A DNA stretch of 64,000 bases, from positions 124,001-188,000 of the IMG/VR virus record IMGVR_UViG_3300046559_001153; one strand, written 5' to 3'. Each line of letters begins with the position of its first letter. The first letter of the stretch is position 1. The position numbers and the translations under genes are program-made. Below the pieces are notes generated by a model. The model saw only the letters and a program-made list of their open reading frames with translations, was not told the origin of the DNA and did not search any database. Positions 20,800 to 64,000 of the stretch are shown piece by piece.

Positions 20800-22620
20800 A
20801 TGCCGATGGAGTCACAGGCACAACGTGCCTACTTGCATATTCACCACCCGCAGATTGCGGCTGAATTTGAAGCGGCCACCCCCAAGGGGAAGAAGCTGCC
20901 CAAGCACGTGAAGAAGAAAGCCGACGAGTCTCCGTCCGCCGTTCATCTGCAGCAGTTCATGCCAACGCAGCATAGACGGGCTTTGACTGAGAACGAATTG
21001 TTAGATGTGCATCGCGGCCAAAAACAATGGCTCCCGTCGATCTTTCAGTCTTACGGGACTCCCCTGCCTTCGATGCTGGCTTCGCCGTGGCGACAAGGTC
21101 TGCTGGCCGGACTGGCCGGGGCTGGTGTTGGCGGACTGGCCGGTGCGTCAATCGGGGCCGGACGCGACGGATCGCCTATTGGGGCTGGCGTAGGCGCCGC
21201 ATTGGGGGCTCTGGGCCTTGGCGGGACCGCCGGGCTGGTGACTGGTTTGAGCCGATCAGCCAAGAACGAGGGCATCATCGAAATGATGAAACGTCTGCCC
21301 GAGAACGCGGTCAAGCGAGATCTGCTGTCTGACCCGGCGTACCAGGCGGACATTAAGCGAGAGAATGACGCTGACAGCATGAATCAGTTCATGTCCGTGA
21401 TGTCGCCGCACAGCATGATGGACTTGGGGCATCCGTCCAATCTGACGATGGGCAAATGGTCCTTTGAAGAAATCGGGCAGAAAGCGGCTCTCTACGGGCC
21501 GAAAGGCTGTCCGGTTCCCGGTTGCACTGAAGGCAATCCCTGCCCCAGTTGCCTGGAGCAGGAAGTAGAAGAGAAGCAATCGGCCAGCAACGATTTAATG
21601 GCTACCGTTTCGTCGCTTATGAAGGAACGCGGCCCGCTGTTTGGTGGAGCCGGCATGGCTTTGGGTGGTCTGGTGGGGGCTGCGGGGGCATCGCCGGGGC
21701 GAGGCGGTGTAGAGACAATACGTGGTGCTGCCCACGGCGGTTTGATGGGGCTTGGGACCGTGGCCGGGGCGGCAGCTGGGGGCAATATCGGTGCTGTGTA
21801 TTCGATTGGAAACAAAGCCCTGCATCCTATTGCCGGTGAGGATTACACTGGACTGGGAACGATGGCCGGGGCAGGACTTGGTGCTTTATTGGCACATCAC
21901 GCTGCCAATGAACTTACAGGACCAATGTTCGAGCCGCACGAAGAAAAGAAAGAGGCCCATGTCCTGACCGAGGGTGAACGGGCCAGTATGCCCAAGTCGG
22001 AGTTCGCTCATCCGCAGCACGCCAAGACCAAGAAACAAAAAGAGGAACCAGGCGGTTACCCGGTGCCGGACAAACAGCATGCTCGATCGGCTTTGGGCTT
22101 TGCGGCCATGCATCATGGAAAAGACTCAGCCATCTACCGACAGGTCAAAGCCAAGGTAGAAGCCAAATTCGGCAAGAAGTCGAATGCGTTCGTCACGTCA
22201 CAGCCGCTGGCTCCCGCCGCCATGCACAATCCATTCGCGGGTGCCACGGCTGCTCCTCCGGCGATGTCCCACCCCGGGCCTGGTCTAGGGTCCGATCCAT
22301 TTCACGTCCTGGGCGGCATGGCAGCTCAGCACGGGATCGGGGCACATGAGTTCACGAACAACATGGCCGCCGGTGACCCGTTCGGTGTGCACGGTGTGCC
22401 TGTCGGTGGCAAGAACCCATTTGCTGCTCCCTCACCAGCGGCAGCCAGGTGGTTGAGCACGGTAAATCCGTTCGCCCCCGCTCCGCCGCAGGCGGCCAAT
22501 TCGGGTTGGGGCAAACACATTGCCGATCACGGATGGAAGTACGGATTGGGTGCAGCGGCCGCGGGTGCTTTGCTGTATCATCTGGCGAACCGGAAGAAAG
22601 AACAGCCGCAGTACGTCTGA
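20800..22620 (+). CDS. Modular putative virion/internal protein with glycine-zipper segments and a DUF6582-like module
   Basis: N-terminal MPMESQAQRAYL..HP.IA.EF...TPKGKKLP module, GxxxG zippers, and LTEGERASMPKSEFAHP...YPVPDKQHARSAL. Confidence 0.75.
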   Translation: MPMESQAQRAYLHIHHPQIAAEFEAATPKGKKLPKHVKKKADESPSAVHLQQFMPTQHRRALTENELLDVHRGQKQWLPSIFQSYGTPLPSMLASPWRQGLLAGLAGAGVGGLAGASIGAGRDGSPIGAGVGAALGALGLGGTAGLVTGLSRSAKNEGIIEMMKRLPENAVKRDLLSDPAYQADIKRENDADSMNQFMSVMSPHSMMDLGHPSNLTMGKWSFEEIGQKAALYGPKGCPVPGCTEGNPCPSCLEQEVEEKQSASNDLMATVSSLMKERGPLFGGAGMALGGLVGAAGASPGRGGVETIRGAAHGGLMGLGTVAGAAAGGNIGAVYSIGNKALHPIAGEDYTGLGTMAGAGLGALLAHHAANELTGPMFEPHEEKKEAHVLTEGERASMPKSEFAHPQHAKTKKQKEEPGGYPVPDKQHARSALGFAAMHHGKDSAIYRQVKAKVEAKFGKKSNAFVTSQPLAPAAMHNPFAGATAAPPAMSHPGPGLGSDPFHVLGGMAAQHGIGAHEFTNNMAAGDPFGVHGVPVGGKNPFAAPSPAAARWLSTVNPFAPAPPQAANSGWGKHIADHGWKYGLGAAAAGALLYHLANRKKEQPQYV

Positions 22621-22638
22621 TAACTTTTCGAAAAGTTA
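22621..22638. promoter_or_regulatory. Palindromic motif, copy 2
   Basis: TAACTTTTCGAAAAGTTA (perfect palindrome), 12 nt before ATG 22651. Confidence 0.8.
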
Positions 22639-22650
22639 CGAGAGGGTAAA

Positions 22651-24291
22651 ATGACATTGATCGAGAAAGCAGCTCTGTGGGCCAACGCTGGCGTTAACGC
22701 GGCTCCTCATAGCTCATTTCACGGCTCTCCCGGCGGTTACGGCATGGGGGCCTTGGCCGCTCATAGCCCCGCGTACAAGCCGCCCATCGTGTCACCAACG
22801 CCCGGCATCCCGGCGACGTCGGCCGGTGTGGCCCAGGTTGCTCAACAGCAGGCCGCCCAGCACGGCATCGCTCCGCCGAAGATGGCCCATTGTGAGGGCG
22901 GCGCCATGTCGACCGAACCAGTCAAACCGCCGAAGATCAAGCCCTTCCGTTTGCAGGGGCAGGAAGCCTGGGACTCGCTCAAGAAGTCTGAGGCGTGGCT
23001 CAGCCTGACGCCGTTCGCTCAGGGGTTCTTCTCGAGATGTTTTGAGGACGGGCTACCGACCAGCCAGATCCAAGCTGGTATCCGAAAATCGGCAAACATT
23101 GATCCGGACATCTACGCCGAGCTTCAACAGGGATTCGAGAAGCTGGCATGGCCGGGGCCTGGCCTGCCCTCGAATGTCACAGCTGCGATTGGCCGCATGG
23201 GCGGTGTCGGTCGAGCAGTGCCCCAGTTGGCGAGCAGAGCAGTCCCTGGCGGTGTTCAAGCCCTGGGTGCTCTCCCGTTGAGTTCGACGCCGAGATCGCT
23301 CCCTATGGCAGCAGCGGCTTCAGCTAAGGTTCCGTTGTTGAATGCTGGTCCCAGCTTTGGCGGCCATGTGCCGCTGACCCCTAGCCCCGGTGTTCAGGCG
23401 TTAGGGGCAATGCCGTCGACCGGTTCTATTCCGTCAATGGCTCCGGCGGCGTCGGCCGCCGCGGCTACAGCTCCGGCTGTTGCCCCGTCAATGTGGTCTC
23501 GCGGCATGGGCATGGGCCGAACAGCGGTCAACACAGGAGCTCGTATGGGCGTTGGTGCGGGCCTCGGAGCCGGATTAGGGGCTGGTGCCCAGTTTGGCTA
23601 TCAGCATCAACAGGGCGACGCCTCAGGCGGTTGGGCAGCTCCCGCAGCGGGTGCTTTGGCTGGAGCCGCGTTGGGAGCCCGTGGCGGAGCCGGGTTCAAC
23701 ATGCTCAATAGCCGACTTGGCCGCGGTATTAGTGCCGCGGGGGCAGCGACGGTTCCGTTTACCGCAGGGGTGACGTTGGCCGGAAATAAGGCCCAGAGCG
23801 ACCTCAGCGGTATGTTGACAACGGCGGCACAAAAACACGGCGTGCAGCCCCAGTCGCTTTTGGCGATGGTGCAAGACCCGGCGAATTTTCAAAAACTGCC
23901 GCAGTCGGAACAGCAGGCCTTCATGAATTCGATGCAGCAGCACATCCCCCAGATGAACCCGATGCACGGTCTCAACGAAATGATGAACGGGATCCCCGGG
24001 CTGGGCCAATGGGACATGTGGAAGAACATGCATCCAGGCGGAAAGCTGATGGCTCTGGCCGGTCTGCTGACAGCTGGCGGCGGAATGATGGGTGGAAGCC
24101 CAGGCATGGCGGGGGCTGGTGGTCTGGCCATGTTGGCACCGTTCTTGTTTCACCACTTTATGAATGGCGGTGGGGGTGGAGCACCGGAAGGCGGAGCAGA
24201 AGCTCCTCCGGCAGCTCCAGGAGCCCAACCAGGTGCATGGGCGGCTGGCGGTGGTCCGGCCCCGCAGTTCCCACAACCGACAGGATTCTAA
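22651..24291 (+). CDS. Gly/Ala/Pro-rich putative virion internal protein with glycine zippers
   Basis: 546 aa; GVGAGLGAGLGAG and related segments; KxA motifs. Confidence 0.75.
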   Translation: MTLIEKAALWANAGVNAAPHSSFHGSPGGYGMGALAAHSPAYKPPIVSPTPGIPATSAGVAQVAQQQAAQHGIAPPKMAHCEGGAMSTEPVKPPKIKPFRLQGQEAWDSLKKSEAWLSLTPFAQGFFSRCFEDGLPTSQIQAGIRKSANIDPDIYAELQQGFEKLAWPGPGLPSNVTAAIGRMGGVGRAVPQLASRAVPGGVQALGALPLSSTPRSLPMAAAASAKVPLLNAGPSFGGHVPLTPSPGVQALGAMPSTGSIPSMAPAASAAAATAPAVAPSMWSRGMGMGRTAVNTGARMGVGAGLGAGLGAGAQFGYQHQQGDASGGWAAPAAGALAGAALGARGGAGFNMLNSRLGRGISAAGAATVPFTAGVTLAGNKAQSDLSGMLTTAAQKHGVQPQSLLAMVQDPANFQKLPQSEQQAFMNSMQQHIPQMNPMHGLNEMMNGIPGLGQWDMWKNMHPGGKLMALAGLLTAGGGMMGGSPGMAGAGGLAMLAPFLFHHFMNGGGGGAPEGGAEAPPAAPGAQPGAWAAGGGPAPQFPQPTGF

Positions 24292-24587
24292 TGAAACATG
24301 GGCGAGGGGCATCATCCACGAGGGTCTTAGCTGCTCATCGGGGCTAAACGCCGTGACGGAAGATGCTGAGATACGATTGTGAGCGTATCTGGACCAGCTG
24401 GAAAAACTCTCGATACTGGTCCCGAGCAGTTGTGGCAGGCTGACTGAGTAACGGGTTTCGATCCAGACCTTTCGCCCGTGGTCAGTTTTGTGTAACGATC
24501 CGCTATCGTGCAACTGCTCTGCCCGCTGTATACTTCGATGAAATGATCCATTGGCATGGATGCCAGGTTCTTTTGAAAGGCCGATCC

Positions 24588-52694: not shown

Positions 52695-52709
52695 CTTTTT
52701 ACAAAGTTA
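52692..52709. promoter_or_regulatory. Palindromic motif, copy 5
   Basis: TAACTTTTTACAAAGTTA (identical to copy 1), 22 nt before ATG 52732. Confidence 0.8.
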
Positions 52710-52731
52710 CAGAGACCAGCAGGTAGGCAAG

Positions 52732-55700
52732 ATGCCCGCGACCTTCATAGGGAAAATGGGTCAGCTGCTGGTCAACGAGGCTCTGCCCGAAGATCTGCGT
52801 AACGGTAAGACCCTGGATTCAAGGGGCTTGACCGACCTGCTGCGGGATGTGGCTGAACGTCACCCCGACAAGTACCGGGACATCTCACACAAGTTGACCC
52901 AGCTGGGTGAAGACGCAGCTCAGCAACTCGGCGGCTATTCGTTCGGGCTCAATGCCATGCGACGGGCCGGGTCAGCCAATGTCATTCGCGATCGCATCAA
53001 AAGCCAGGTTCAGTCACTGCTCGACAATGACAACCTGTCAGATGATGCACGCGAGTCCCAGATCGTCAAACTCCTGGGTCAGGCCCAGTCAGAACAAGAG
53101 AACGCCGTCTACGACGAGAGTTTGAAAGAGAACAATCCGATCGCCTTGCAGATCAAGTCAGGCGCTCGCGGCAAGAAGATGGCTCTCAATTCTCTGCGTG
53201 GGTCCGATCTGCTGTATGTCGACCATCGCGACCGGCCAGTGCCCATCCCCGTCCTGCGGAGTTACCCTGAGGGCCTGTCGCCGGCCGAGTATTGGGCTGG
53301 GGCCTATGGTGCTCGTCACGGCATTGTCAGTGTGAAGCTGGGCACAGCCCAGTCAGGCTTCCTGGCGAAACAACTCAATCAAGCGACCCACCGGCTGATT
53401 GTGACGCATGAGGATGACGCTCCGGTCGATACGGTCCGAGGCCTGCCAGTCCCTGTCGACGATAACGACAATGTGGGGGCCTTGCTGGCCCATCCGGCTG
53501 GTGGTTTTGGGCGGAACACGGTTCTGACGCCCAAGGTTCTGAAGTCCCTGCATGATGGCGGCATTCAGAGAATTCTGGTACGCAGCCCGACTGTTGGCGG
53601 GGCACCTGATGGGGGTCTCTACTCACGCGATGTTGGCATTCGAGAAACTGGCGGTCTGCCGCCCAAAGGAACGTTCTCCGGTCTGCAGGCCGGTCAGGCG
53701 ATCTCTGAGCCGTTGTCGCAGGCCACCTTGTCCGCCAAGCACGCAGGGGGCGTTGCCGGAGCATCCAAATCAGTGTCAGGCTTTGCCTGGATCAACGCCC
53801 TGGTTCAGATCCCCAAGGTATTTCCTGGCGGGGCAACGCATTCAGAAGTAGACGGGCGTGTGCAGCAGATTACCAAGGCACCTGGCGGCGGTTTGCACGT
53901 GCAGGTGAACGGACTGGAGCATTACGTGCCGCACGGGCTGGCTTTGACAGTTGCCCCGGGCGACGCGGTTGAAGCTGGCGACGTGCTCAGTGAGGGCATT
54001 CCCAGCCCGGCCGAGATCGTCAAGCACAAGGGAATTGGTGAAGGTCGCCGGTACTTTGTGGATGCCATGCGTAAAGCATTGACCGACTCTGGTGTTCGAA
54101 ACAATCGCCGAAATCTCGAACTCATCAGTCGTGGTCTGATCAATCACGTCGAGCTCGACGCGGAGATCGGCGAACACGCGCCAGACGACGTTGTCCCATT
54201 CGACACGATCGAACGGGATTACGAGCCGAGAGAAGGCAGTCACACGCTGCCTGTCCACCAGGCAATCGGCCAGTATCTCGAGAAGCCCTACCTGCACCAC
54301 ACGATTGGTACGAAGGTCAAATCGAGCATGTTGCCGGACTTCAAGCATTTTGGAGTTGAATCGGTTCACGTGCACAAAGATCCGCCGCTATTCCATCCGC
54401 TCATGGTTCGCGGTATGTACAACTTGCAGCACGACCCGGACGCCATGACAAGGAATCTAGGTTCAGGGCTGCAGGCAAGCTTCCTGGACTCGGTCCACCG
54501 TGGCGGCGGCAGCGACGAAAAGGGTACCAGCTATGTTCCCGGCCTGGCCCGTACTGTGGATTTTGGCCGCATTGGCGTTATCCGGCCGACTGTGGTTACA
54601 CCGCAGAGATCGACTATGAAAATCGCAGCTGGCAGCCCGATTGCCCCGGCTCTCGACCCGAAACCGGCTCCCATCAAACCACTGGCGCCACCACAGCCTC
54701 AAATAAAACCGATTGCTCCTCCACCGTCGCCGGCTTTGCAGGCGAAGCCTCAATCTGTGCTGGGCGATAGTTCGATCAACGGGTTCGGTGACTTCTTCCA
54801 TCATGCCGGTAATCTGCTGCGTGGGCCCGGGTACGACGCCGGGATGGCACCGGCAACTGCCGGTTTCAAGAACACGATGACGCCGCAGCAGTTTGGCCAA
54901 CAGATGCGGACTGATCTTCCCGGTCTGCCTAATCCGGTTGCACCAGCCGCACAACCCGGAGTATGGGATCAAGCGAAAGCCATAGCGCCTGGCCTGGCTA
55001 CCAATCTCGGGGTTAATGTAGCTGGGCAGCAGATAGCAAAAAATACGTTGGTGCGAGCCGTTCCCAGATTAGGAGTAGGTGCCGCCTCAAAGCTCTTGCC
55101 TCTCGGTATCGGCGCCGCAGTTGCCGAGCCGATTGGGTGGCTCGGTAAAAAGACCGGAATTCCAGGCTTCGAAAACGATGCAGCATATGACACCAATGCG
55201 TATCGTCAAGAGGCCGAAGGTTTGCACTACGGGATGCCGGCCGGCTGGCGTCAGGACACCAATCGACCGTGGTATATTCGAATGGGAGACTGGTTGGCCA
55301 ATGACGCAGGAACAGCCGTAATGCAGCCTCAGACGGCCGTCATGAACGCGTTTGGCAAGTCGAGCGATGACGCCTTGGGAATTCCTTCTCGCGACGAGAT
55401 GGGAGACTTATCCAAGCTCGAAACGGGCAAGCTCTATGACCTGTTTACACAGCTCCATAACGCCACCAAAGCCGGTCCCCACACTGATCTGAGGATTGGC
55501 GATCCGGAGCAGGGGCTGCACTCTTGGGCCGTGCCGAAGGGTTTACCCGAGTCTGGGAAGAAGCATCTGGCTGTCCACCAGCCAATTCACGAGCATTCCT
55601 ACGGGGGCTGGTCGGGCACGATTCCCGAGGGCGAATACGGGGCCGGTACGGTCAAGAGTCAGATCAAGGGCAAGGCCCTGGTGACCGAGTCGGGTCCGGG

Positions 55701-56883
55701 CAAACTGCATTTTACGACAGCTCACATGAAGCATCCCGAGCGGTTCACTGTGGTGGCGCCAAAAAGCTTCGGTGAAAACAATCACCTGCTGCTCAACACG
55801 ACGCCGACCGAGCCGCTGCCGTACCAGAAGATCCACTACAAGAAAGTTCCGACCGAACAGGTCGAAGGAAAGTTGAAGGAGTTAGAACCCGGTTCGTCGG
55901 TGCAGGCCAAGATTGACGGTGCATCGAGCCTGGTCAAACTGCTCAAGGATCAGCTCGAACTGTATTCGTACCGGGCATCAAAGCCGACAGGAAAACCAAT
56001 CATTCACACGGAGAAGGTGTTACATGGCCGGCCTCGGATTGAGATCCCTCCTGAGTACCACAACAGCATCCTGCGCGGTGAGTTACACGGGGTCAAGCAA
56101 GACTCCGAAGGAAAAGAAACGGTTATTCATCCCAGCGAACTTGGTGGTATCCTCAACTCAACGATTGCTCACTCGCTGGCAAAACAAGAGACCTCAGGCG
56201 TTCGGCTCCGTAACGCACTGTTCGACATTCAACAGGTTGGCAACACGCCAATTGACTTCTCCAAGACGCCATATTCTGAACGTCGGGAACACTTGAAGAG
56301 CATTCTGCCGTCGCTGCCGCAGGACATTTTTCACTTGACCGACGAAGCCAAGACACCGGAAGATGCGCTGAAGTTGTGGAAAGACATTGGTAGCGGGGAT
56401 CACCCGAAAACTGAGGAAGGAATCGTTATCCACTCTCCAACGGGCAAGCCCCAGAAGGCTAAGTACATTGAAGATCACGACGTTCACATCCGCGGTATTT
56501 TCCCTGGCGAAGGCCGTCTTGCTGGAACTCATGCCGGCGGCTTTGAGTACTCTGCTGAGCCTGATGGTCCTATTCTCGGCCGTGTTGGCACTGGCTTTTC
56601 TGACGATGTTCGTCGCCAGATGCATGATCGACCTGACGATTTCGTGGGGCGGGTTGCCCGGGTGAAGTCCCAGGAGAAGTTGCAGTCGGGTGCGTTGAGA
56701 GCTCCGGCTTATATCGCTCTCCACGAAGATTACCCAGTGTCGTCGGCTTTGAATAAGGCGGCCGAGCTAGAACGCGTCCGTCTGCGTGTGAAAGAATTGG
56801 CAGAGAAAAAGGCGACCGCTTCTCCAATTTCTCTGGCCAGAGAACGCCTTCAAGCTATCCGAGCGAAAAATTTGGGCCTATAA
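52732..56883 (+). CDS. rpoC: Fusion protein: RNA polymerase beta' C-terminal half + Pro/Gly-rich linker + LigD 3'-phosphoesterase domain + ATP-dependent DNA ligase
   Basis: Beta' motifs: KSGARG, SYPEGLSPAEY..GAYGARHG...TAQSGFL, GLQAGQAISEPLSQATLSAKHAGG. PE motifs: QLH...HTDLR, SWAVPKG, H..SY, GTIPEGEYGAGTV. Ligase motifs: KIDG, RGEL, LFDI, EEGIVI, KAK, GRVGTGFSD. Start moved to ATG 52732 (AGGTAGG RBS). Confidence 0.92.
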   Translation: MPATFIGKMGQLLVNEALPEDLRNGKTLDSRGLTDLLRDVAERHPDKYRDISHKLTQLGEDAAQQLGGYSFGLNAMRRAGSANVIRDRIKSQVQSLLDNDNLSDDARESQIVKLLGQAQSEQENAVYDESLKENNPIALQIKSGARGKKMALNSLRGSDLLYVDHRDRPVPIPVLRSYPEGLSPAEYWAGAYGARHGIVSVKLGTAQSGFLAKQLNQATHRLIVTHEDDAPVDTVRGLPVPVDDNDNVGALLAHPAGGFGRNTVLTPKVLKSLHDGGIQRILVRSPTVGGAPDGGLYSRDVGIRETGGLPPKGTFSGLQAGQAISEPLSQATLSAKHAGGVAGASKSVSGFAWINALVQIPKVFPGGATHSEVDGRVQQITKAPGGGLHVQVNGLEHYVPHGLALTVAPGDAVEAGDVLSEGIPSPAEIVKHKGIGEGRRYFVDAMRKALTDSGVRNNRRNLELISRGLINHVELDAEIGEHAPDDVVPFDTIERDYEPREGSHTLPVHQAIGQYLEKPYLHHTIGTKVKSSMLPDFKHFGVESVHVHKDPPLFHPLMVRGMYNLQHDPDAMTRNLGSGLQASFLDSVHRGGGSDEKGTSYVPGLARTVDFGRIGVIRPTVVTPQRSTMKIAAGSPIAPALDPKPAPIKPLAPPQPQIKPIAPPPSPALQAKPQSVLGDSSINGFGDFFHHAGNLLRGPGYDAGMAPATAGFKNTMTPQQFGQQMRTDLPGLPNPVAPAAQPGVWDQAKAIAPGLATNLGVNVAGQQIAKNTLVRAVPRLGVGAASKLLPLGIGAAVAEPIGWLGKKTGIPGFENDAAYDTNAYRQEAEGLHYGMPAGWRQDTNRPWYIRMGDWLANDAGTAVMQPQTAVMNAFGKSSDDALGIPSRDEMGDLSKLETGKLYDLFTQLHNATKAGPHTDLRIGDPEQGLHSWAVPKGLPESGKKHLAVHQPIHEHSYGGWSGTIPEGEYGAGTVKSQIKGKALVTESGPGKLHFTTAHMKHPERFTVVAPKSFGENNHLLLNTTPTEPLPYQKIHYKKVPTEQVEGKLKELEPGSSVQAKIDGASSLVKLLKDQLELYSYRASKPTGKPIIHTEKVLHGRPRIEIPPEYHNSILRGELHGVKQDSEGKETVIHPSELGGILNSTIAHSLAKQETSGVRLRNALFDIQQVGNTPIDFSKTPYSERREHLKSILPSLPQDIFHLTDEAKTPEDALKLWKDIGSGDHPKTEEGIVIHSPTGKPQKAKYIEDHDVHIRGIFPGEGRLAGTHAGGFEYSAEPDGPILGRVGTGFSDDVRRQMHDRPDDFVGRVARVKSQEKLQSGALRAPAYIALHEDYPVSSALNKAAELERVRLRVKELAEKKATASPISLARERLQAIRAKNLGL

Positions 56884-57150: not shown

Positions 57151-59652
57151 ATGTCCATTCTGCTTGCAGGTAGCCAGTCGCTCGCGAAACGCGCTAACAT
57201 CGGCGGCGATCCTGAAGGGAACTTCGAACAATCGTTCGCCTCGCTGGGCTATAACTTCCTGAGTGAAAAAGCCCCCAGGCTGCTCGAGCACATGCTGGGC
57301 TTCCAGCTGCTTGACCGCAACGACGACATGTCACGAGCTGTCGGCGTTTATGGTTTCCAGGCTGATACCAAGCGACTGTACATGCCTTTGTTTTTCCTGA
57401 ATGGGGAACTTCGCGGCCAGGAATTGCTCTTCGTTCAGAACAAGGACGAGGGGCAGTTTGTCCCCATGAAGGAGAACTGGGTCAACTTCCTGCTCAGCAA
57501 GTCGCCACACATCATGGGCGAGGCGTCGCAGAAGGATGTGTTCCAGATGGGCGGGATGTGGCCGGACCTGCGTCCATTCACGAACGCTTACCGCGGTAGC
57601 AAATACTCATGCGACATGCCGCGTATCCAAGAGTGGGCCAAGCCGTTCATGCCCGTCTATGCTCGTCTCTGTACGACCAACCCTCTGCGTGACACTCGTT
57701 ACGCGAAGATCGCGACAGCCCAAAACCTGCTGAGCGAATCTCCGATGGCCGTGAAAATGGCCATCGATCTGTGTGACCGATTCCCGAACGTCAAGGCGGC
57801 CATGCACCGGTGTTACGGAGCGGACGTCTTTGAGAAGGCTCTACTGACCATCAAAGCCCGACTGACCAAAGAGGCGTCGGATCGAGGCAGCATTCTCTCG
57901 TTCAAGCCGCAGAAGGTGGCAGTCGCGCGTTCCCGATCGAGCATACTGCCCGACCTGACCCCCCAGGACCCCGTTAAGCTGGGGGCTTTGAAGATTATGC
58001 GGGTCGATCCGAATGAACGTTTTACGCACAACATTCCCGATCGATCACGCGAAGAGGCCACTGGCGACACCCGCCGCGGCGCCGTCGTGATCACCGACAA
58101 ACGCTTGCCGCAGGACAAGTCGACCCTGTACAACACGGCGATCCATACGGCCTACACGAATCCAACTCGATCTTCCCTGGCTGAGGTGCTGGCCGGGGCC
58201 GGCAAGTTCGAGAAGTGCCTGATCATCCATCGCCCATACTCCGGCAAGGGGCAGCACACCTTCGTGACTGTCGTCCGAGCGGAAGGTCAAAGTTCAGCCC
58301 GCAACTGGATCAACTCGGACGCTACGAACATTTACGTTCGCCAGCCGATTGAAAGCCAGTTCGATTTCAAGACCTGGTTCGACGGATTGTCGTCCGCCAA
58401 GATGACCAAGGACAGCACGTATGTCGCGCTGACCGGTGACGGCCGCGGTACATTGCCGTTTACAGTGAACAGCGTTCTGGATGATGACTGTTACCGAGTC
58501 CAATACGAGACCGGACACAAGCGACCACAGTACGCTCACATGTCGCGAAATTACAGCACCAACGGATTGGGCGACCGCGACACGCCGCCCAATCCGTCGG
58601 GTTACACGGATTACAATGCCTTGCTGCATTTGAACGGCCGTAAGGGCTCCAGCATCCACGCCGTTGGTGGCGAACTGTGGATCCCCGACAGCGCTAAAAT
58701 CCTCAAGATCCAAGACCCATTTGACCCAGAAGATGACAGTGACGAAGACTCAATTTCGCCGCTCCAGCCTGGCAACCTGATTGACGTGCAGAATCAGATC
58801 TACCAGAAAACAGCGTCCCTCAAGCTCTGGACGGTTGGGTCAGACGAAATCGCTCTGTCGACAAAGTTTGGCACGCGCCGCATGAGCAAACAAGCCGCTT
58901 ACGTGGCGATGGTTGCTGACCTTGGGCTGGGGATTGATGATGCAGACGCGGCCATGGACAAAGTGACCAAAGCCGGTTCGGCCAAGTTCAGGATTCTGTA
59001 CGGACCGTTCTACCAGAAGCGGGCTGACGCGTGGCCCGGCTACGGCGGCGACCTGCTTGATCAGGGCCCGAGTGCTCCCCGAGAAGGGCCGCCACCGACC
59101 GGATCCGGCTTCCCGTGGTACGGCGGAGCGATCAACAAGTATCCGCAGGAGGAGTACCTGGAAGTTCCAGGACTCAATGCCTACTCAACCAATCCCTGGA
59201 TCTACGATCCCACTCGTATCCCCGATCCAGGGACTGGCCCCGGCGCCTACGGCACAGACCAGGCCGGGTCGGGAAGCTTCTCTCAGGGTCAGGATTCGTC
59301 ATCCCAGGGCGTCCAAAATGCGGCGGCATCTGGCCAGAAGGAAGTCTTCGATACGACCATCTTGAGCAACCTGCTCAACTCGGTTCGACAGGAGAGCGTG
59401 GTCGATCGCTACTTGAGCGACCTGATGACTGGGCTTGACCGAATCGGGCGTATTCTGTTCAGCTTCTACTGGCACATGGATGACGTCAAAGAGCACTACG
59501 GTGCGGCCGAGACGCCCGATCTCATCGATGCCATGCGAAATGCGTTTGAAGAATGCGGCGACGTCACGTTGAAACTTCGTCAGAACTCGATGAACCCTGA
59601 CATGGGTGAAATGGGATCGCCGAACGTTGAAGACGTGGCTCGTGCTGACTGA
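57151..59652 (+). CDS. Large conserved putative virion protein
   Basis: 833 aa with multiple KxA motifs (KRAN, KIAT, KEAS, KTAS, KRAD). Confidence 0.78.
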   Translation: MSILLAGSQSLAKRANIGGDPEGNFEQSFASLGYNFLSEKAPRLLEHMLGFQLLDRNDDMSRAVGVYGFQADTKRLYMPLFFLNGELRGQELLFVQNKDEGQFVPMKENWVNFLLSKSPHIMGEASQKDVFQMGGMWPDLRPFTNAYRGSKYSCDMPRIQEWAKPFMPVYARLCTTNPLRDTRYAKIATAQNLLSESPMAVKMAIDLCDRFPNVKAAMHRCYGADVFEKALLTIKARLTKEASDRGSILSFKPQKVAVARSRSSILPDLTPQDPVKLGALKIMRVDPNERFTHNIPDRSREEATGDTRRGAVVITDKRLPQDKSTLYNTAIHTAYTNPTRSSLAEVLAGAGKFEKCLIIHRPYSGKGQHTFVTVVRAEGQSSARNWINSDATNIYVRQPIESQFDFKTWFDGLSSAKMTKDSTYVALTGDGRGTLPFTVNSVLDDDCYRVQYETGHKRPQYAHMSRNYSTNGLGDRDTPPNPSGYTDYNALLHLNGRKGSSIHAVGGELWIPDSAKILKIQDPFDPEDDSDEDSISPLQPGNLIDVQNQIYQKTASLKLWTVGSDEIALSTKFGTRRMSKQAAYVAMVADLGLGIDDADAAMDKVTKAGSAKFRILYGPFYQKRADAWPGYGGDLLDQGPSAPREGPPPTGSGFPWYGGAINKYPQEEYLEVPGLNAYSTNPWIYDPTRIPDPGTGPGAYGTDQAGSGSFSQGQDSSSQGVQNAAASGQKEVFDTTILSNLLNSVRQESVVDRYLSDLMTGLDRIGRILFSFYWHMDDVKEHYGAAETPDLIDAMRNAFEECGDVTLKLRQNSMNPDMGEMGSPNVEDVARAD

Positions 59653-59654
59653 CG

Positions 59655-59686: not shown

Positions 59687-60127
59687 ATGGCCGTTCCTTA
59701 TGAAACACTGGCTTCTGACCTGAATGTGTCAGGGGGCCAGGTCAACTGTTTTCCGATTCCGTTCCCCAGCCGAACATTCATCGGCAAGCTGATCGTTTTG
59801 CAAACTGGTGGTGCCGGATGCACGTTCACTGTTAACGTGTACAACCGCGTGACCGCCTGCGAAAAGATCTCGATCGCCAATGACCAGGGTAGTGGTCCAG
59901 GCCCTGATCCGGCCCCGCTGTACATGGTCATGCCTCCCTTGACCAACATCTACCCGATTCACTTTGTGTCAGCCTTCGCTCAGGGCGGATTGGGCTGGCC
60001 GTTCTTCAATATGGACGGCGATATCGGATTCGGCAATCCTCACATGATCTATCTTCAGATCGCCCCGCAGGGGTCTGGTCCCAAGGAATTTGCCGCTTCG
60101 ATTAACGGCGCCAGCGATCTTAACTGA
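59687..60127 (+). CDS. Hypothetical beta-rich protein, possibly structural
   Basis: 146 aa with a GAGGG RBS. Confidence 0.65.
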   Translation: MAVPYETLASDLNVSGGQVNCFPIPFPSRTFIGKLIVLQTGGAGCTFTVNVYNRVTACEKISIANDQGSGPGPDPAPLYMVMPPLTNIYPIHFVSAFAQGGLGWPFFNMDGDIGFGNPHMIYLQIAPQGSGPKEFAASINGASDLN

Positions 60128-60136
60128 CGAGCAAGA

Positions 60137-61171
60137 ATGCCTGTTCTCACCGACTTGGCCTACAAAGGGCCCGAACTCACTACTGACGACATGGTTTTTG
60201 GGGACGCGACCCTGCGGCCTGACTGGCGGTGGGAACGAGTCCTGGACATGGTCAACCATTCACCGTGCCCATTACGCAACAAGCGATTCGACGACTCGTA
60301 CGTCCGCACCATGCGACAGTACATGCTGCAGAACCGCGGCGACAACGAAGAGCGTAAAAAGAATCTGTTTTTCGAGTACCCGGGTTGCTACCACGCGTTG
60401 AAATTGCATCAGGATGTCGACGGGGCCGATATGCGATTGTTTCTGCAATCGCGGTTCCTGGCCAGACAATCCATTCCCGATATCGCGAGATACACGGGCA
60501 TGTTACCCATCTCGATTGAATGGTACGAGAAGCTGTTCTTCAATGTCTCGGACAGGATCAGCGATCAAGACTGGATCTTGCGGCATATCCTTGGCCCCGA
60601 AGCCAGCCGACAACTCAATAACTACGAACTGGCCATTAAAATGCTAGCTTACCACGGGGGTGTCAGCGTCCTTAACTTCATGCTGACAGGCTGTCGAGAG
60701 CTGGAACATCCGCAGACACCAGAAGAAGTCATCAACTATGTCACCGACTATGCCGTCGACGGAATCATCCGCAAAGCGGCTCTGGCGGTTTACTGCTACA
60801 CGCCCAACAAGTATAAAATAGAACAGCTGTTGGACATGGCTCGTCAGGCCAAAGCCGATATGAAGGCCAAGGAAGACGAGACAGATCGAATCGAAATGGT
60901 CGCGGGTGCTGTGCGACATACGTTAGAGGCGATCGAATTCATCAAGGGTGACATGGCTGAGGATTGGTTGAGAGCCAGGTCACCGCAGTTGCTTGAGTAT
61001 GACGGTTTTGCGGCCGAGTTACGCGATCAACAGGTTTACGCGGTCGTGACAGGCAATCTGGCGTCTGTCGAACACATGCGACACAGGAAGTTCCCGGAAG
61101 CACCGAAGCGCGAATCCAAGTTGCTAACAGCCAAGGATGGCAAGCATGAAGACCCTCTCGAAACAAGCTGA
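60137..61171 (+). CDS. Conserved hypothetical protein
   Basis: 344-aa ORF. Confidence 0.75.
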   Translation: MPVLTDLAYKGPELTTDDMVFGDATLRPDWRWERVLDMVNHSPCPLRNKRFDDSYVRTMRQYMLQNRGDNEERKKNLFFEYPGCYHALKLHQDVDGADMRLFLQSRFLARQSIPDIARYTGMLPISIEWYEKLFFNVSDRISDQDWILRHILGPEASRQLNNYELAIKMLAYHGGVSVLNFMLTGCRELEHPQTPEEVINYVTDYAVDGIIRKAALAVYCYTPNKYKIEQLLDMARQAKADMKAKEDETDRIEMVAGAVRHTLEAIEFIKGDMAEDWLRARSPQLLEYDGFAAELRDQQVYAVVTGNLASVEHMRHRKFPEAPKRESKLLTAKDGKHEDPLETS

Positions 61172-62414
61172 GACTCAGCTTCTGTCGGCTGTCAAAAACG
61201 TTGTCGGACACGTCGACAATGGGGATGACCCGACTGACGCCGTGGTCAAAGTGGCTCAAGAGCTGGAATTGCCCCGCGGGCATCTGCAGCTGCTTTGCAG
61301 CGCGTACAACACGGGTCGCGTGAACGCCCAGAGGAAGATGGCAGCTGCCAGCATCATGGAGCGGTTTGAGGATATCCCGCTGGCTGACCACGAGAAGGCC
61401 GCCCAACAGATCTGGCCTGACAAAATTGAAACACCGTCCGAGCGCCTGAGCAAAACAGCCGTCTCGGACGATTACCGAAAAGCTCCGCACTGGTTAGCAC
61501 CGTGTCTGACTAGCCCTCCTGCGCGAAAAGCAGCCAGTGCGGAGCCTCTTGTTCTTACCCCGGCGCAACGCAAAGACGCCGCCTGGAAGACGATCCTTGA
61601 CGGCCAACGCCGCATTCAAGACGTCCGTCCCAAGTCGTCGGCCGCCCGTGACAACATGGTCGCCTCGATGCAGACGCTGACCGGATACTTCAAACGGGCC
61701 AATTGTCTGCCGTTTTCCGAGGTGCATTACGCAGTCGCGTCAGATCCCGCGGCCGAAGCTCTGATGCAGGTCGTGGGTGCCAGCCTGGGACGTGAGAAGC
61801 AGGCGGCAGTTGTCCCCCGAGTGATGCACTCGGTTGTCTGGACAGAGGCCCCGTACACACTGATCAAAGAAGCCCTGGCCGCCTGCGAGTTGGCCGTTAA
61901 CGCCCGTCGTGAACTGGTTGAACTTGAAGCCAGTATTAAGACGGCCCGAGAGGAGGTATACGGCCCCTCTGGGGCCCATAAAAGTGGGTCTGAAAAAGTG
62001 GGGGCTGGAGGATCTATTTTCGGGACAGCGCTTGGAACCACTTTCGGGTCAACATTGCCTAAGCCCAAATCTACGGGCGAAAGAGTTGAGTCTGCTGTCA
62101 CCGCGTTAGACGATCCGGATCACGAAAACGCTATGCGTAACATCCAGATCACGGCCATGCTGCGAGACATGATGTCGAATGACGAAGTGATCAAGGGCTA
62201 CGAGCCGGAAGAGGTTCTGCACGCCTACAATCAAATCTCGCAGACAGCACCAACTGTCGCCATGCACTCGATCGCTCTCGGACCTGAGCTTCGATCTGTC
62301 CTGCAGCGCAACCGGGCACCGCACGAGACGTCACAACTGGTCGGTCTGGAGAAGGATCTTCGCGGACTACGGCCGCCACTCGGGGCGGCGCCTGAAAAGA
62401 AGGACACGAAATGA
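61146..62414 (+). CDS. Putative virion protein rich in KxA motifs
   Basis: KQAE, KMAA, KTAV, KAAS, KDAA, KRAN, EKQAAV. Confidence 0.75.
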   Translation: MKTLSKQAETQLLSAVKNVVGHVDNGDDPTDAVVKVAQELELPRGHLQLLCSAYNTGRVNAQRKMAAASIMERFEDIPLADHEKAAQQIWPDKIETPSERLSKTAVSDDYRKAPHWLAPCLTSPPARKAASAEPLVLTPAQRKDAAWKTILDGQRRIQDVRPKSSAARDNMVASMQTLTGYFKRANCLPFSEVHYAVASDPAAEALMQVVGASLGREKQAAVVPRVMHSVVWTEAPYTLIKEALAACELAVNARRELVELEASIKTAREEVYGPSGAHKSGSEKVGAGGSIFGTALGTTFGSTLPKPKSTGERVESAVTALDDPDHENAMRNIQITAMLRDMMSNDEVIKGYEPEEVLHAYNQISQTAPTVAMHSIALGPELRSVLQRNRAPHETSQLVGLEKDLRGLRPPLGAAPEKKDTK

Positions 62415-63511
62415 CGCCCGCAACGCCGCTGGAAGCCACGACGATCAAGGAAGCTGCCGAGATGCTGGCGAAGCGAATCGTTCTGATTCGTCTTACCAAG
62501 CAGGCGGCTGGTTTGTCGGACTACGTCGAGCCGTATGTGAACAAGGCAACCGAGTTCCTCGACAAGACAGCACCACAGGTTGGCAAATTCTACAGCGAGA
62601 ACGCGACGCCCATTCACGCCGGATTGGGTGGGGCTGCCTTGGGGGCAGCAATGGGTGGTCTCTCCGGTCTGACGAGCCCCGACGAGGATCGACGTAACCC
62701 GGGCCGAAGTGCCCTCATGGGCGGATTGGCCGGCGGTGCGGTGGGCGGGGGTCTCGGACTGTTAGCTCAGCACGGGCCTGCTCTGAAGAAGTTGTTTGGC
62801 GCATCGAAGTCGATCGATACGGCAAAGAGTGAGGCGGATGCCTCTGGCGGTTTGATCCGCCAGTATCTCCCTCCTATGAAGCCTGACGCGACGGATCCGA
62901 CTCGAGCTGGATTGCTGGCCCAGACGCTCGGTGGTGATTATGCTGGCACGACAGCCAAAGTAGTTGCCCCAGCCGCGATAGGGATCGAGAGCGGGATCGG
63001 GTTCAACAATTGGAGAAATGCTCACAATCCATTGACTACGAAAAATATCCGAACCGGTGCTAGCGAGTTTTTGGGTAAAAAGGATTTTGGCGGACTAGCC
63101 AGCACGCTGAATGTTCATCCAAATGTCGGATCGCCGTCAACCTGGATGGGTGCACCCGACGATATCGCAAAGAAAATGGAAGCAGCATTAACCAATTTGC
63201 AGACTGACAAAGCTCCATTTTGGGGCGGCGGGATACACTCCCCTCGAGGGATGGGCAGTTCCTACATGAAAGAGCTTGGCGGATTGCACGGTCCACCGGG
63301 CTGGTATGACAAAACAATGACAGCGATCGGCAACGCTGGAATGAAAGCCAACGCGGTAGAAGCCAGTTCAGCTGGCGGCATGCTAAGACGAGGCGCCGGC
63401 TTCGGCGGGCGTATGCTCGGATACGCGGCTTTGCCTGCTCTGGCCAGCTACTATCAACCACCCGTCGCTCCAGTTCTTAAACCCGGTCTGACAGATCTCC
63501 TGAAGAGATAA
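62411..63511 (+). CDS. Putative virion internal protein with glycine zippers
   Basis: KEAAE, KQAAG, GLGGAALGAAMGGLSG, GGLAGGAVGGGLG. Confidence 0.72.
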   Translation: MTPATPLEATTIKEAAEMLAKRIVLIRLTKQAAGLSDYVEPYVNKATEFLDKTAPQVGKFYSENATPIHAGLGGAALGAAMGGLSGLTSPDEDRRNPGRSALMGGLAGGAVGGGLGLLAQHGPALKKLFGASKSIDTAKSEADASGGLIRQYLPPMKPDATDPTRAGLLAQTLGGDYAGTTAKVVAPAAIGIESGIGFNNWRNAHNPLTTKNIRTGASEFLGKKDFGGLASTLNVHPNVGSPSTWMGAPDDIAKKMEAALTNLQTDKAPFWGGGIHSPRGMGSSYMKELGGLHGPPGWYDKTMTAIGNAGMKANAVEASSAGGMLRRGAGFGGRMLGYAALPALASYYQPPVAPVLKPGLTDLLKR

Positions 63512-63517
63512 ACTCCC

Positions 63518-64000
63518 ATGATGACCAAAGTGATTAGCCCGGCCGGCTGGGACTTCGGCACTGCCCTGACCGAGATGGTCAAGGTATCCAGCCGCGGACT
63601 GATTGGCAGTGACCGTAACTCGCTGATCAAGCGAGCCGGTTACGCATTTGCCAACCTGGTCGATCACTCGGATTTGAAGCCCGGAGACGTCCCCATTCAT
63701 CAGATTGCGATGGGGGCCACCGAACGTTATCTGGCCAACCGTAACGGAGATGGATTCAAACGGGCCAACCTGATTCGAACGATCGACACGTTTGTGAAGC
63801 GTGCCCGGTACTACCGCAATCACCAGAACAAGGATCCCCGCAAGTCGTACGGGGTGATTAAGAGAGCGGCTTACCACGACCCGATGGATCGTGTTGAGCT
63901 TTTGATCTTTTTGAATGGGACAAAAGAGGCGGCTGACCGTAATGGTGGCCTGGTAGCCGATCGCGAACTTCAGCAACTCGAAAAGACCGGTGAGCTGGCT
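63518..64000 (+). CDS. Probable prohead/maturation protease, N-terminal part (runs off the window)
   Basis: Hand-translated, open for 161 codons: H.IAMGATERY..NRNGDGF, YRNHQNKDP..SYG.I..AAYH..MDRVELL. Motifs are recalled from large-phage putative prohead proteases; the catalytic Ser is not in the window. Confidence 0.5.
   Translation, partial: MMTKVISPAGWDFGTALTEMVKVSSRGLIGSDRNSLIKRAGYAFANLVDHSDLKPGDVPIHQIAMGATERYLANRNGDGFKRANLIRTIDTFVKRARYYRNHQNKDPRKSYGVIKRAAYHDPMDRVELLIFLNGTKEAADRNGGLVADRELQQLEKTGELA

What the first reader, a model, noticed from the sequence alone, without database searches (positions are those of the whole stretch)
20800..64000. Recurrent K-x-A motif at module boundaries of late proteins: candidate novel prohead-protease cleavage signal
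Seen: dozens of (E/Q/V/L)-K-x-A-(A/S/G/N) sites in ORFs 20800, 22651, 38077, 40044, 40961, 51718, 52732, 57151, 61146, 62411 and 63518. They often sit exactly where composition changes (EKLA|WPGPG, QKQA|NWP, TKQA|AGL, MKIA|AGSP, QKRA|DAWPG). Established: T4 and phiKZ prohead proteases cut many head proteins at short motifs ending in Glu. Inference: this lineage uses a Lys-x-Ala specificity, and many of these ORFs are polyproteins. Enrichment was judged by eye and not counted.
Basis: partly seen in the sequence, partly recalled or inferred. Interest (0 to 1): 0.75.

Follow-up and report, generated by a model that had tools for sequence, protein, structure and literature searches.

The report
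Lys-x-Ala sites in phage head genes
A short Lys-x-Ala motif is strongly over-represented and conserved in the head-assembly proteins of this 224-kb phage and its many relatives, and is most likely the cutting signal of the phage's own head-maturation protease, a specificity I did not find described for any phage protease.

Summary
The motif is real, but the enrichment is local. Across 20800-57000, KxA matches composition (51 observed, 51.5 expected). In the head-gene block from 57151 to the window end it is 29 against 13.1, and the excess continues about 7 kb past the window.

In that block (12 ORFs) KxA is the top outlier of all X-x-Y pairs (56 against 25.2, z 6.1). RxA, AxK, KA and KxxA are flat.

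The same gene families show the excess in 64 of 66 metagenomic relatives, and in Salmonella phage Arash, Vibrio phage D69 and Bacillus phage G.

In alignments K and A are near-invariant while x varies. The footprint is (L/F)-(E/V)-K-x-A-(A/S). The capsid protein has one invariant site at residues 29-31, and its body is almost free of the motif.

ORF 63518 does encode the prohead protease. Its modelled N-domain matches T4 gp21 at Z 11.1. It carries an intein at the invariant SMA|C motif and is itself the most enriched protein.

The same scan on T4 returns IxE and LxE, its known motif.

ORFs 20800, 22651, 41675 and 52573 show no signal, and "polyproteins" is not supported. Actual cleavage is inferred, not shown.

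The parts
57151..59652 (+). Head-module protein of 833 aa and unknown role. Its C-terminus is similar to the virion 'structural protein' gp218 of phage Arash. It carries 9 KxA sites. Two are conserved in the family: aa 13-15 (nt 57187-57195, LAKRA-N) and aa 623-625 (nt 59017-59025, QKRA-D, just before the Pro/Gly-rich linker).
   Evidence: 9 observed against 3.5 expected, shuffle P 0.004. The orthologue family ratio is 2.43. The N-terminal site is shared by 12 of 13 relatives, and the boundary site corresponds to VKYA-D-PYGG in 11 of 13. BLASTP to Arash gp218 gives E 1e-9; there is no similarity to the phage G portal. I do not call it the portal.
59687..61171 (+). Two head-module ORFs (146 and 344 aa) that are not enriched. 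They serve as internal negative controls.
   Evidence: 0 and 1 KxA sites. The family ratio for 60137 is 0.84.
61137..62414 (+). All-helical, scaffold-like protein of 425 aa. All 11 KxA sites lie in aa 9-270 (nt 61161-61946), spaced 15-40 aa apart. They are followed by a disordered Gly-rich linker and a C-terminal helical domain of about 155 aa with no KxA.
   Evidence: 11 observed against 3.4 expected. The 66 orthologues are only about 29% identical, yet carry 12.3 sites each against 4.5 expected. Sites fill the first 70% of the protein and are absent from the last 30%. 29% of sites lie in alignment columns shared by fewer than 10% of members, so positions turn over while density is kept. The model has helices over 1-275, low confidence over 279-308 and helices over 313-411.
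62411..63511 (+). Gly-zipper protein of 366 aa. It is not enriched overall, but all 3 KxA sites lie in the N-terminal 54 aa (nt 62447-62572), ahead of the Gly-zipper. This makes the N-terminus a candidate propeptide.
   Evidence: 3 observed against 3.2 expected. All six positional analogues in relatives have KxA at aa 16-59; two of them also carry earlier N-terminal or later sites, and the remaining 300-400 aa are otherwise almost free of KxA.
63518..64000 (+). The first 161 aa of the prohead protease. The ORF runs on to window coordinate 66133 (871 aa). The window part has 5 KxA sites (KRA four times and KEA once, nt 63629-63931). A 382-aa intein starts just past the window end (nt 64013-65158), inside the invariant VSMA|C motif.
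   Evidence: 14 observed against 5.2 expected for the full ORF. The exteins have 14 against 3.3 and the intein 0 against 1.7. Pfam finds Hint and LAGLIDADG domains. Intein-free orthologues are about 495 aa, with H62, H103, S166 and C169 invariant. The model's residues 1-241 match T4 gp21 (5jbl) at Z 11.1, rmsd 3.3 A over 151 residues, and herpesvirus proteases at Z 4.9-5.5. 120 of 120 family representatives at 50% or lower identity have more than twice the expected KxA (13.7 against 3.7).
41459..41467 (+). KQA at aa 167-169 of ORF 40961, just before a Gly-zipper or membrane-like segment. It is a possible processing site outside the head module, with weak evidence.
   Evidence: KQA sits in the same alignment column in 5 of 6 relatives. 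The ORF is not enriched (4 against 2.5) and the flank score is poor (-2.81).
51775..51783 (+). KVA at aa 25-27 of ORF 51703, followed by F-T-P and a low-complexity region. It is a possible N-terminal propeptide boundary, with weak evidence.
   Evidence: The K-x-A-F-(V/I/T)-P block is conserved in 4 of 4 aligned relatives. The flank score is like background (-1.36).
40155..40163 (+). KSA at aa 38-40 of ORF 40044, after the first helical segment. It is a possible processing site, with weak evidence.
   Evidence: A KxA occurs at or next to this column in 4 of 4 aligned relatives. The flank score is +1.30.
20800..24291 (+). ORFs 20800 and 22651, both Gly-zipper and low-complexity proteins.
   Evidence: 3 against 5.6 and 4 against 2.7. 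All flank scores are at or below +0.32. 22651 has no homologue in five complete relatives. Only residues 52-188 of 20800 recur, inside ORFs of about 1,600 aa.
52573..56883 (+). Fusion of the RNA polymerase beta' C-terminal part, a Pro-rich linker, a LigD phosphoesterase and an ATP-dependent ligase. The true start is probably 52732.
   Evidence: Domains are from Pfam. KxA is 6 against 7.5. MKIA is not conserved in the five orthologues, four of which end near this point as separate ORFs. Its flank score is -1.37.

Best explanation
Lys-x-Ala is the recognition motif of this phage lineage's own prohead (capsid maturation) serine protease, encoded by the ORF that starts at 63518. The extended form is (L/F/I)-(E/V/T)-K-x-A followed by A/S/E.

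The inferred sequence of events is as follows. The protease is built into the prohead. There it removes about 31 N-terminal residues from the major capsid protein. It removes short N-terminal propeptides from some internal or Gly-zipper proteins. It cuts the helical scaffold-like proteins (61137, 66165, 67472, 70828 and parts of 57151) into pieces of roughly 15-40 residues. Finally it digests itself. The fragments can then leave the shell before DNA is packaged.

What is shown here: the motif's specific enrichment; its conservation and positional turnover; its flanking footprint; its near-absence from the mature capsid protein; and the protease's fold and homology.

What is inferred: that the motif is cleaved at all; that this protease is the enzyme; and that the cut falls after Ala. 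The last point rests on analogy with the P3-x-P1 motifs of T4, phiKZ/SPN3US and herpesvirus proteases.
For: 1. Specificity. In the head block KxA is 56 against 25.2 (z 6.1) and is the top pair over all residue pairs and spacings 0-3. RxA, AxK, KA, KxxA, KxS and KxG are flat.

2. Locality. The six most KxA-rich ORFs of the genome lie close together in one block around the protease, scaffold and capsid genes.

3. Replication. The same orthologue families are enriched in six relatives. In 64 of 66 IMG/VR relatives KxA is the top pair upstream of the capsid gene (2,919 against 1,236), while downstream it is 560 against 513. Family ratios are 2.2-3.9 for the enriched families and 0.4-1.1 for their neighbours.

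4. Depth. KxA is also the top pair in the head modules of phage Arash (44 against 19.7), Vibrio phage D69 (50 against 20.7) and phage G (22 against 11.2). Their capsid proteins are only 25-29% identical to this one.

5. Short-motif signature. In the protease alignment K and A are 93-100% conserved at 12 or more sites, while x is about 30% conserved. In the 61137 family 29% of sites are lineage-specific, yet the density is maintained.

6. Footprint. Sequence information is confined to P5-P2'. G/P/D/N are excluded at P2, I/L/V/P at P1' and K/R at P2'. A flank matrix trained only on relatives separates this genome's head sites from its other KxA sites (Mann-Whitney P 5e-12).

7. Capsid protein. 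K29 and A31 are invariant, following a variable N-terminus. The body has 15 sites against 97.7 expected in 120 homologues.

8. Enzyme. The fold matches T4 gp21 at Z 11.1. The family is homologous to head maturation proteases. H62, H103 and S166 are invariant. Inteins in family members appear to interrupt the catalytic domain near conserved motifs, at about profile positions 70, 103 and 170.

9. Positive control. The same scan on T4 gp67, gp68, gp21 and gp22 returns IxE and LxE as the top two pairs.

10. Precedent. SPN3US gp245 cuts after AXE, prefers V at P4 and S at P1', cuts long propeptides several times and cleaves itself (PMC10052503).
Against: There is no direct evidence of cleavage. No mass spectrometry or N-terminal sequence exists for any member. 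The Arash virion proteome paper reports only coverage, and its supplement holds no peptides.

The relatives are not independent samples, so the pooled P values and the capsid-body depletion overstate significance. This genome's own capsid body has 0 sites against about 0.9 expected, which means nothing on its own.

Several conserved KxA sites lie inside strands or helices of the modelled catalytic domain. These may be structural residues rather than cut sites.

The protease family matches no Pfam S77, S78 or S80 model. The catalytic residues were not mapped onto T4 gp21 residue by residue.

The position of the scissile bond (after A or after K) cannot be decided from sequence.
Confidence: 0.7

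Rival explanations
1. The motif is cut by the prohead protease, but the bond cleaved is after the lysine (K|x-A, a trypsin-like P1 Lys with Ala at P2') rather than after the alanine.
For: The logo carries information on both sides of the tripeptide: two residues before K and two after A. That is compatible with either register. Nothing in the sequence data fixes the scissile bond.
Against: The characterised proteases of this fold that I could compare read a P3-x-P1 tripeptide and cut after it. T4 uses L/I-x-E; the same scan recovered that motif but not the position of its scissile bond. SPN3US uses A-x-E with S favoured at P1' (PMC10052503). Herpesvirus assemblin uses V/L/I-x-A|S (established knowledge). 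Here the residue after A is small (A or S) and bulky I/L/V/P are excluded, as expected for a P1' position.
Confidence: 0.12
2. KxA is a conserved structural or assembly motif of the head scaffold that is never cut. Examples would be a helix-packing or capsid-binding contact, or a site of lysine modification or cross-linking.
For: Many sites sit in predicted helices of all-helical proteins. Some lie inside the folded protease domain. No cleavage has been observed.
Against: A packing motif would not be expected to change position freely while keeping its density. It would not be expected in unrelated folds: a beta-rich protease domain, helical scaffolds, disordered linkers and the capsid protein's N-terminal tail. 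It would not be expected to be almost absent from the mature capsid protein body. Helix periodicity would also raise KxxA, KxxxA or AxK, which are flat. The distribution matches that of the experimentally known T4 motif.
Confidence: 0.12
3. The KxA pattern is a by-product of Lys- and Ala-rich composition and of eye-picked examples.
For: It holds for most of the stated region. 20800-57000 gives 51 against 51.5. ORFs 20800, 22651, 41675 and 52573 show nothing.
Against: It fails for the head block under whole-protein and 30-residue local shuffles, under the all-pairs comparison, in 64 of 66 relatives and in 120 of 120 protease representatives.
Confidence: 0.03

Closest known systems
Bacteriophage T4 gp21 prohead protease (PDB 5jbl), with its (L/I)-x-E cleavage motif
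   Same: It is the best structural match to the modelled protease domain: Z 11.1, with 151 of 164 residues aligned. Both genes sit next to the scaffold and capsid genes. The statistical signature is the same: the motif is enriched in the protease itself, in scaffold or core proteins, and present in the capsid protein's N-terminal propeptide (T4 control).
   Different: No sequence-profile match to Pfam S77. The motif has Lys at P3 and Ala at P1 instead of Leu/Ile and Glu. The protein is about 495 aa, with a Cys-rich segment (C169, C176, C179, C190, C195, C200) and a helical C-terminal half of about 250 aa that T4 gp21 lacks. The capsid propeptide is about 31 aa here; the 65-aa figure for T4 is from my own knowledge.
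phiKZ gp175 / SPN3US gp245 giant-phage prohead proteases, with the (A/S/G)-x-E motif
   Same: Both are jumbo phages that package an RNA polymerase; for this lineage that is known only from phage Arash. In both, long propeptides are cut at several copies of a three-residue motif, the protease cleaves itself, V is favoured at P4 and S at P1' (PMC10052503; logo).
   Different: P1 is Ala rather than Glu, and P3 is Lys. There is no Pfam S80 match. The capsid protein is a different family: 312 aa, phrog_2522, related to phage G gp27.
Herpesvirus assemblin (maturational protease), which cleaves (V/L/I)-x-A|S
   Same: The fold superfamily is the same (Z 4.9-5.5 to PrV, HSV and HCMV proteases). P1 is Ala with a small P1' (A or S). 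It also releases and degrades scaffold. The herpesvirus motif itself is established knowledge, not tested here.
   Different: P3 is Lys here rather than a hydrophobic residue; the hydrophobic preference is shifted to P5. There are many sites per substrate, against two in the herpesvirus scaffold. The host is bacterial.
Bacillus phage G gp19, Salmonella phage Arash gp222 and the Vibrio phage D69 VPHD69_0270 product
   Same: All are true homologues. hhalign of the protease alignment against G gp19 gives probability 98.4 and E 9e-15, with the SM(A/G)C and CxxC motifs aligned. All three match phrog_18299 'head maturation protease'. All three are themselves KxA-enriched, and several site positions align.
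   Different: These records name them only 'gp19', 'structural protein' and 'hypothetical protein'; one phage G paper (PMC12484599) lists gp19 as a head maturation protease. No cleavage motif is reported in the papers I could read. The phage G capsid protein (282 aa) has no KxA and appears to lack the propeptide.

Membership tests
Assemblin / T4 gp21-fold prohead serine proteases | Characteristic protease fold | tested here: met
   An AlphaFold2 model of the intein-free orthologue (mean pLDDT 83) has residues 1-241 matching 5jbl_B at Z 11.1, rmsd 3.3 A over 151 residues. Herpesvirus proteases are the next matches at Z 4.9-5.5. Foldseek probability is 0.99.
Assemblin / T4 gp21-fold prohead serine proteases | Sequence-profile membership in a curated protease family | tested here: inconclusive
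   There is no Pfam match to S77, S78 or S80, even at E 10. The link is transitive only: the L003 orthologue matches phrog_2774 (E 3e-6). Phage G gp19 matches both phrog_2774 (5e-35) and phrog_18299 'head maturation protease' (3e-19), and hhalign of A1 against gp19 gives probability 98.4.
Assemblin / T4 gp21-fold prohead serine proteases | Conserved catalytic Ser and His | tested here: inconclusive
   H62, H103 and S166 are invariant in 54 sequences. An intein interrupts the invariant VSMA|C motif next to S166. I could not superpose these residues on the gp21 catalytic residues one by one.
Assemblin / T4 gp21-fold prohead serine proteases | Gene placed within the head module, next to scaffold and major capsid genes | tested here: met
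   The order is protease, then a low-complexity scaffold-like ORF, then a 139-aa helical ORF, then a 182-aa ORF, then the capsid protein (phrog_2522). It is the same in all relatives examined.
Assemblin / T4 gp21-fold prohead serine proteases | Proteolytic activity on head proteins | not testable with these tools
   This needs mass spectrometry or an in vitro assay.
Prohead-protease cleavage motif (short P3-x-P1 signal, as in T4 LxE or phiKZ AxE) | Motif enriched in the scaffold/core proteins and in the protease, and present in the capsid propeptide | tested here: met
   for enrichment; for the capsid protein's K29-x-A31. The T4 positive control shows the same picture.
Prohead-protease cleavage motif (short P3-x-P1 signal, as in T4 LxE or phiKZ AxE) | Motif residues conserved while the middle residue and the flanks vary, with a limited flanking footprint | tested here: met
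Prohead-protease cleavage motif (short P3-x-P1 signal, as in T4 LxE or phiKZ AxE) | Motif avoided in the mature shell protein | tested here: met
   15 observed against 97.7 expected in the bodies of 120 capsid protein homologues. The sequences are related, so this is closer to one observation than to 120.
Prohead-protease cleavage motif (short P3-x-P1 signal, as in T4 LxE or phiKZ AxE) | Observed neo-termini at the motif | not testable with these tools
   No peptide-level data were available. The Arash supplement holds only gene tables.
   ORF 52573 is a fusion of modules that are separate genes in 4 of 5 relatives. However, its boundary KxA is not conserved and scores like background. ORFs 20800, 22651 and 41675 show no enrichment. 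The enriched proteins look like multiply-cut propeptides and scaffolds, not strings of enzymes.

The most novel reading that the evidence does not exclude
A very large and deep branch of assemblin-fold prohead proteases may share one cleavage specificity, (L/F)-(E/V)-K-x-A|(A/S). The branch has at least 2,784 clusters at 50% identity. It runs from Bacillus megaphage G through Salmonella phage Arash and Vibrio phages to hundreds of metagenomic jumbo phages of about 225 kb. The specificity would combine a basic P3 with Ala at P1. That is closer to herpesvirus assemblin (V/L-x-A|S) than to the Glu-P1 rule of T4 and phiKZ. If so, the motif alone would allow mature virion proteins, propeptides and disposable scaffold to be predicted in silico for this whole uncultured clade.
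Probability: 0.6. Interest if true: 0.65.

Novelty: new variant of a known kind. Interest (0 to 1): 0.58.

Why it matters
Cleavage motifs are known for only a handful of prohead proteases: T4, the phiKZ group, herpesviruses and a few others. Each was found by laborious protein chemistry.

Here a motif is recovered from sequence statistics alone, for a protease family that is abundant in metagenomes (2,784 clusters at 50% identity) and has cultured members.

If confirmed, it would add a Lys-P3 / Ala-P1 specificity to this protease fold. It would also give a rule for predicting mature head proteomes of an uncharacterised jumbo-phage clade. Finally, it would show that an unbiased X-x-Y enrichment scan of head modules can find maturation signals; the same scan recovers the T4 motif.

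Tried and rejected
- Nucleotide search of 57151-64000 against deposited phages found no match.
- A single-sequence scan of viral contigs with the capsid protein found nothing. It worked once an alignment was used.
- A profile search of the protease alignment against PDB sequences found no hit.
- The genome search could not reach the contigs behind the loci returned by the look-up of encoding contigs.
- I first took 57151 for the portal and dropped that. It has no similarity to the phage G portal, the Atlas search was uninformative, and its Arash counterpart gp218 is distinct from the protein annotated there as portal.
- A fold search with the 61137 model returned only long-helix noise such as tape-measure proteins.
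- The Arash supplement holds no peptide lists.
- Literature searches for a KxA prohead-protease motif found nothing. The library lacks most subscription journals, so this is not proof of novelty.
- Genome-wide high-scoring KxA sites outside the head block are scattered and point to no further substrate cluster.
- The intein has 0 KxA against 1.7 expected. This fits the hypothesis but is not significant.

Full report
**Context.** The window is bases 124001-188000 of a single-contig virus record of 224,270 bp. Almost all genes are on the + strand. It is a jumbo phage with a split and fused multisubunit RNA polymerase. ORF 41675 encodes beta plus the N-terminal part of beta'. ORF 52573 encodes the C-terminal part of beta' fused to a LigD phosphoesterase and an ATP-dependent ligase.

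The enrichment had been judged by eye, so I counted it against per-protein composition, whole-protein shuffles and 30-residue local shuffles.
- Over the stated region the excess is not significant: 75 against 63.5. The rest of the genome gives a ratio of 1.11.
- The signal is local. ORFs starting in 20800-57000 give 51 against 51.5. 57151-64000 gives 29 against 13.1 (P 1e-4). ORFs from 63518 to about 71300, beyond the window, give 32 against 13.1.
- The six ORFs with the strongest excess in the whole genome lie close together in one block: 57151, 61137, 63518-66133, 66165, 67472 and 70828.
- ORFs 20800, 22651, 41675, 52573 and 62411 are not enriched.
- Much of 20800-57000 is not late-gene territory. 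24543-37400 and 46106-51000 encode an epimerase, methyltransferases, a glycosyltransferase, a nucleotidase, an EndoVII/HNH nuclease and a dCMP deaminase. No orthologues of the ORFs between 26015 and 36000 or between 46106 and 51700 were found in the syntenic 40 kb of five complete relatives.

**Is it specific?** In the 12-ORF head block, KxA (56 against 25.2, z 6.1, P 8e-8) is the strongest outlier among all residue pairs at spacings 0-3. RxA, AxK, ExA, KA, KxxA, KxS, KxG, KxV and KxL are all at expectation. This rules out simple Lys/Ala richness and helix periodicity.

**What are the genes?**
- ORF 68566-69504, just outside the window, is the major capsid protein (phrog_2522).
- The 63518 ORF is 871 aa. 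It carries a 382-aa Hint/LAGLIDADG intein at residues 166-547, inserted in an invariant VSMA|C motif.
- Intein-free orthologues are about 495 aa, with H62, H103, S166 and a cysteine cluster invariant.
- They are homologous to phage G gp19 (hhalign probability 98.4).
- gp19, Arash gp222 and the Vibrio phage D69 orthologue all match phrog_18299 'head maturation protease'.
- An AlphaFold2 model (pLDDT 83) has an N-terminal domain that matches the T4 gp21 protease at Z 11.1, with herpesvirus proteases next.
- ORF 61137 is modelled as all-helical. A disordered linker follows residue 275, then a C-terminal helical domain.
- ORF 57151 is the counterpart of the Arash virion protein gp218. I could not show that it is the portal.

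**Replication in relatives.** The capsid protein has more than 1,000 metagenomic homologues, many on contigs of 220-240 kb.
- In six syntenic loci the same gene families are enriched. For example, the protease has 16-19 sites against about 4 expected.
- In 66 IMG/VR loci, KxA is the top X-x-Y pair in the 7.5 kb upstream of the capsid gene in 64 cases (2,919 against 1,236). Downstream genes are at expectation (560 against 513).
- Family ratios for the enriched families: 57151 at 2.4, 61137 at 2.7, the protease at 3.2, 66165 at 2.2, 67472 at 3.4 and 70828 at 3.9.
- Family ratios for their neighbours: 60137 at 0.84, 67950 at 0.79, the capsid protein at 1.1 and 71333 at 0.36.
- Among 120 intein-free protease representatives no more than 50% identical to each other, all exceed twice the expectation (13.7 against 3.7). 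The family has 2,784 such clusters.
- KxA is again the top pair in the head modules of distant cultured phages whose capsid proteins are 25-29% identical to this one: Arash (44 against 19.7, with LxK also raised), Vibrio phage D69 (50 against 20.7, with KxxS also raised) and phage G (22 against 11.2).

**Signature of a short linear motif.**
- In the protease alignment, K and A are 93-100% conserved at a dozen sites, while the middle residue is about 30% conserved.
- In the 61137 family (about 29% identity) each protein keeps about 12 sites, yet 29% of sites lie in alignment columns shared by fewer than 10% of members. Sites fill the first 70% of the protein and are absent from the last 30%.
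- A logo from 2,788 sites carries information only from P5 to P2'. P5 is L/F/I, P4 is E/V/T, P2 excludes G/P/D/N, P1' is A/S/E and excludes I/L/V/P, and P2' is A/D/E and excludes K/R.
- A flank matrix trained only on relatives separates this genome's head-block sites (mean +1.16) from its other KxA sites (mean -1.61; Mann-Whitney P 5e-12).
- The capsid protein has K29 and A31 invariant after a variable N-terminus (consensus LEKQA-VDAVNDF). Its body carries 15 sites against 97.7 expected across 120 homologues. These sequences are related, so that number overstates the evidence.

**Positive control.** The same unbiased scan on T4 gp67, gp68, gp21 and gp22 returns IxE and LxE as the top two pairs. 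Enrichment is seen in the scaffold (16 against 5.7) and in the protease (7 against 2.6). That is the experimentally known gp21 motif. SPN3US gp245 cuts after AXE, prefers V at P4 and S at P1', cuts long propeptides several times and cleaves itself (PMC10052503). The architecture found here is the same, with different letters.

- QKRA-DAWPG (57151) corresponds to a conserved VKYA-D-PYGG in 11 of 13 full-length relatives. The N-terminal LAKRA-N is shared by 12 of 13.
- TKQA-AGL (62411) fits a conserved layout. All six positional analogues have KxA at aa 16-59, before the Gly-zipper. Two of them also carry earlier N-terminal or later sites, and the rest of each protein is otherwise almost free of KxA.
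- QKQA-NWP (40961) keeps KQA in 5 of 6 relatives but has a poor flank score.
- K-x-A-F-(V/I/T)-P in 51703 and the second site of 40044 are conserved in 4 of 4 relatives. I regard these as possible sites only.
- MKIA-AGSP (52573) is not conserved, although four of five relatives end the beta' ORF near that point.
- EKLA-WPGPG cannot be tested, because 22651 has no homologue in five relatives.
- 'Polyproteins' is therefore not the right description. The data fit short N-terminal propeptides, long propeptide or scaffold regions that are cut many times, and protease self-digestion.

**Mechanism and its limits.** I conclude, at about 0.7 confidence, that K-x-A is the cleavage signal of the 63518 protease. 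The cut is probably after Ala, by analogy with the P3-x-P1 motifs of this protease fold and with the small P1' residue. No tool here can show cleavage. The register (after A or after K) and the status of sites buried in the protease fold remain open.

**Prior knowledge.** I found no report of such a motif in the searchable literature. That library omits most subscription journals.

Noticed in passing
window 64013-65158 (just past the window end; L001:7013-8158), inside the ORF that starts at 63518: A 382-aa Hint/LAGLIDADG intein interrupts the prohead protease at the invariant VSMA|C motif next to the candidate catalytic Ser166. One relative (L009) has an intein at the same site. Among 150 family representatives, 26 carry large inserts whose split profile matches suggest at least three insertion points: about profile positions 70, 103 and 170, each near an invariant motif.
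   Followed up: partly
window 41675-46093 and 52573-56883: The RNA polymerase genes are unusually fused. One ORF (1,472 aa) holds beta plus the N-terminal part of beta'. Another holds the C-terminal part of beta', a Pro-rich linker, a LigD 3'-phosphoesterase and an ATP-dependent DNA ligase. In 4 of 5 complete relatives the beta' C-part is a separate ORF of 630-920 aa, and in two relatives the ligase part matches elsewhere in the genome, once inside an open frame of 2,984 aa. Alignment with relatives suggests the real start of 52573 is the ATG at 52732.
   Followed up: partly
window 20800-24291, 38077-41659, 62411-63511: There is a striking number of proteins with Gly-zipper (GxxxG-rich, membrane-like) segments and Pro/Gly/Ala low-complexity tails: 20800, 22651, 38077, 40044, 40961 and 62411. 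In phage Arash many ORFs of the corresponding late region are detected in virions (PMC10585845), so these may be internal or ejected membrane-active proteins.
   Followed up: no
window 24543-37400 and 46106-51000: These are accessory islands inside the late region: a nucleotide-sugar epimerase, methyltransferases, a glycosyltransferase, a deoxyribonucleotidase, an AAA-type ATPase, an EndoVII/HNH nuclease and a dCMP deaminase. No orthologues of the ORFs between 26015 and 36000 or between 46106 and 51700 were found in the syntenic 40 kb of five complete relatives.
   Followed up: partly
L008:13067-14932 and L003:14354-15121 (relatives' loci): One relative carries an ORF with a weak Cas12f1-like/TnpB-type nuclease domain hit a short way downstream of the capsid gene. 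Another carries a papain-like Peptidase_C1 ORF there.
   Followed up: no
whole clade: This phage belongs to a large, apparently undescribed clade of jumbo phages of about 200-240 kb. It has more than 1,000 capsid protein homologues and many complete IMG/VR genomes, one with direct terminal repeats. The nearest cultured relatives are Salmonella phage Arash, Vibrio phages D69, D148 and D181, and more distantly Bacillus phage G.
   Followed up: partly
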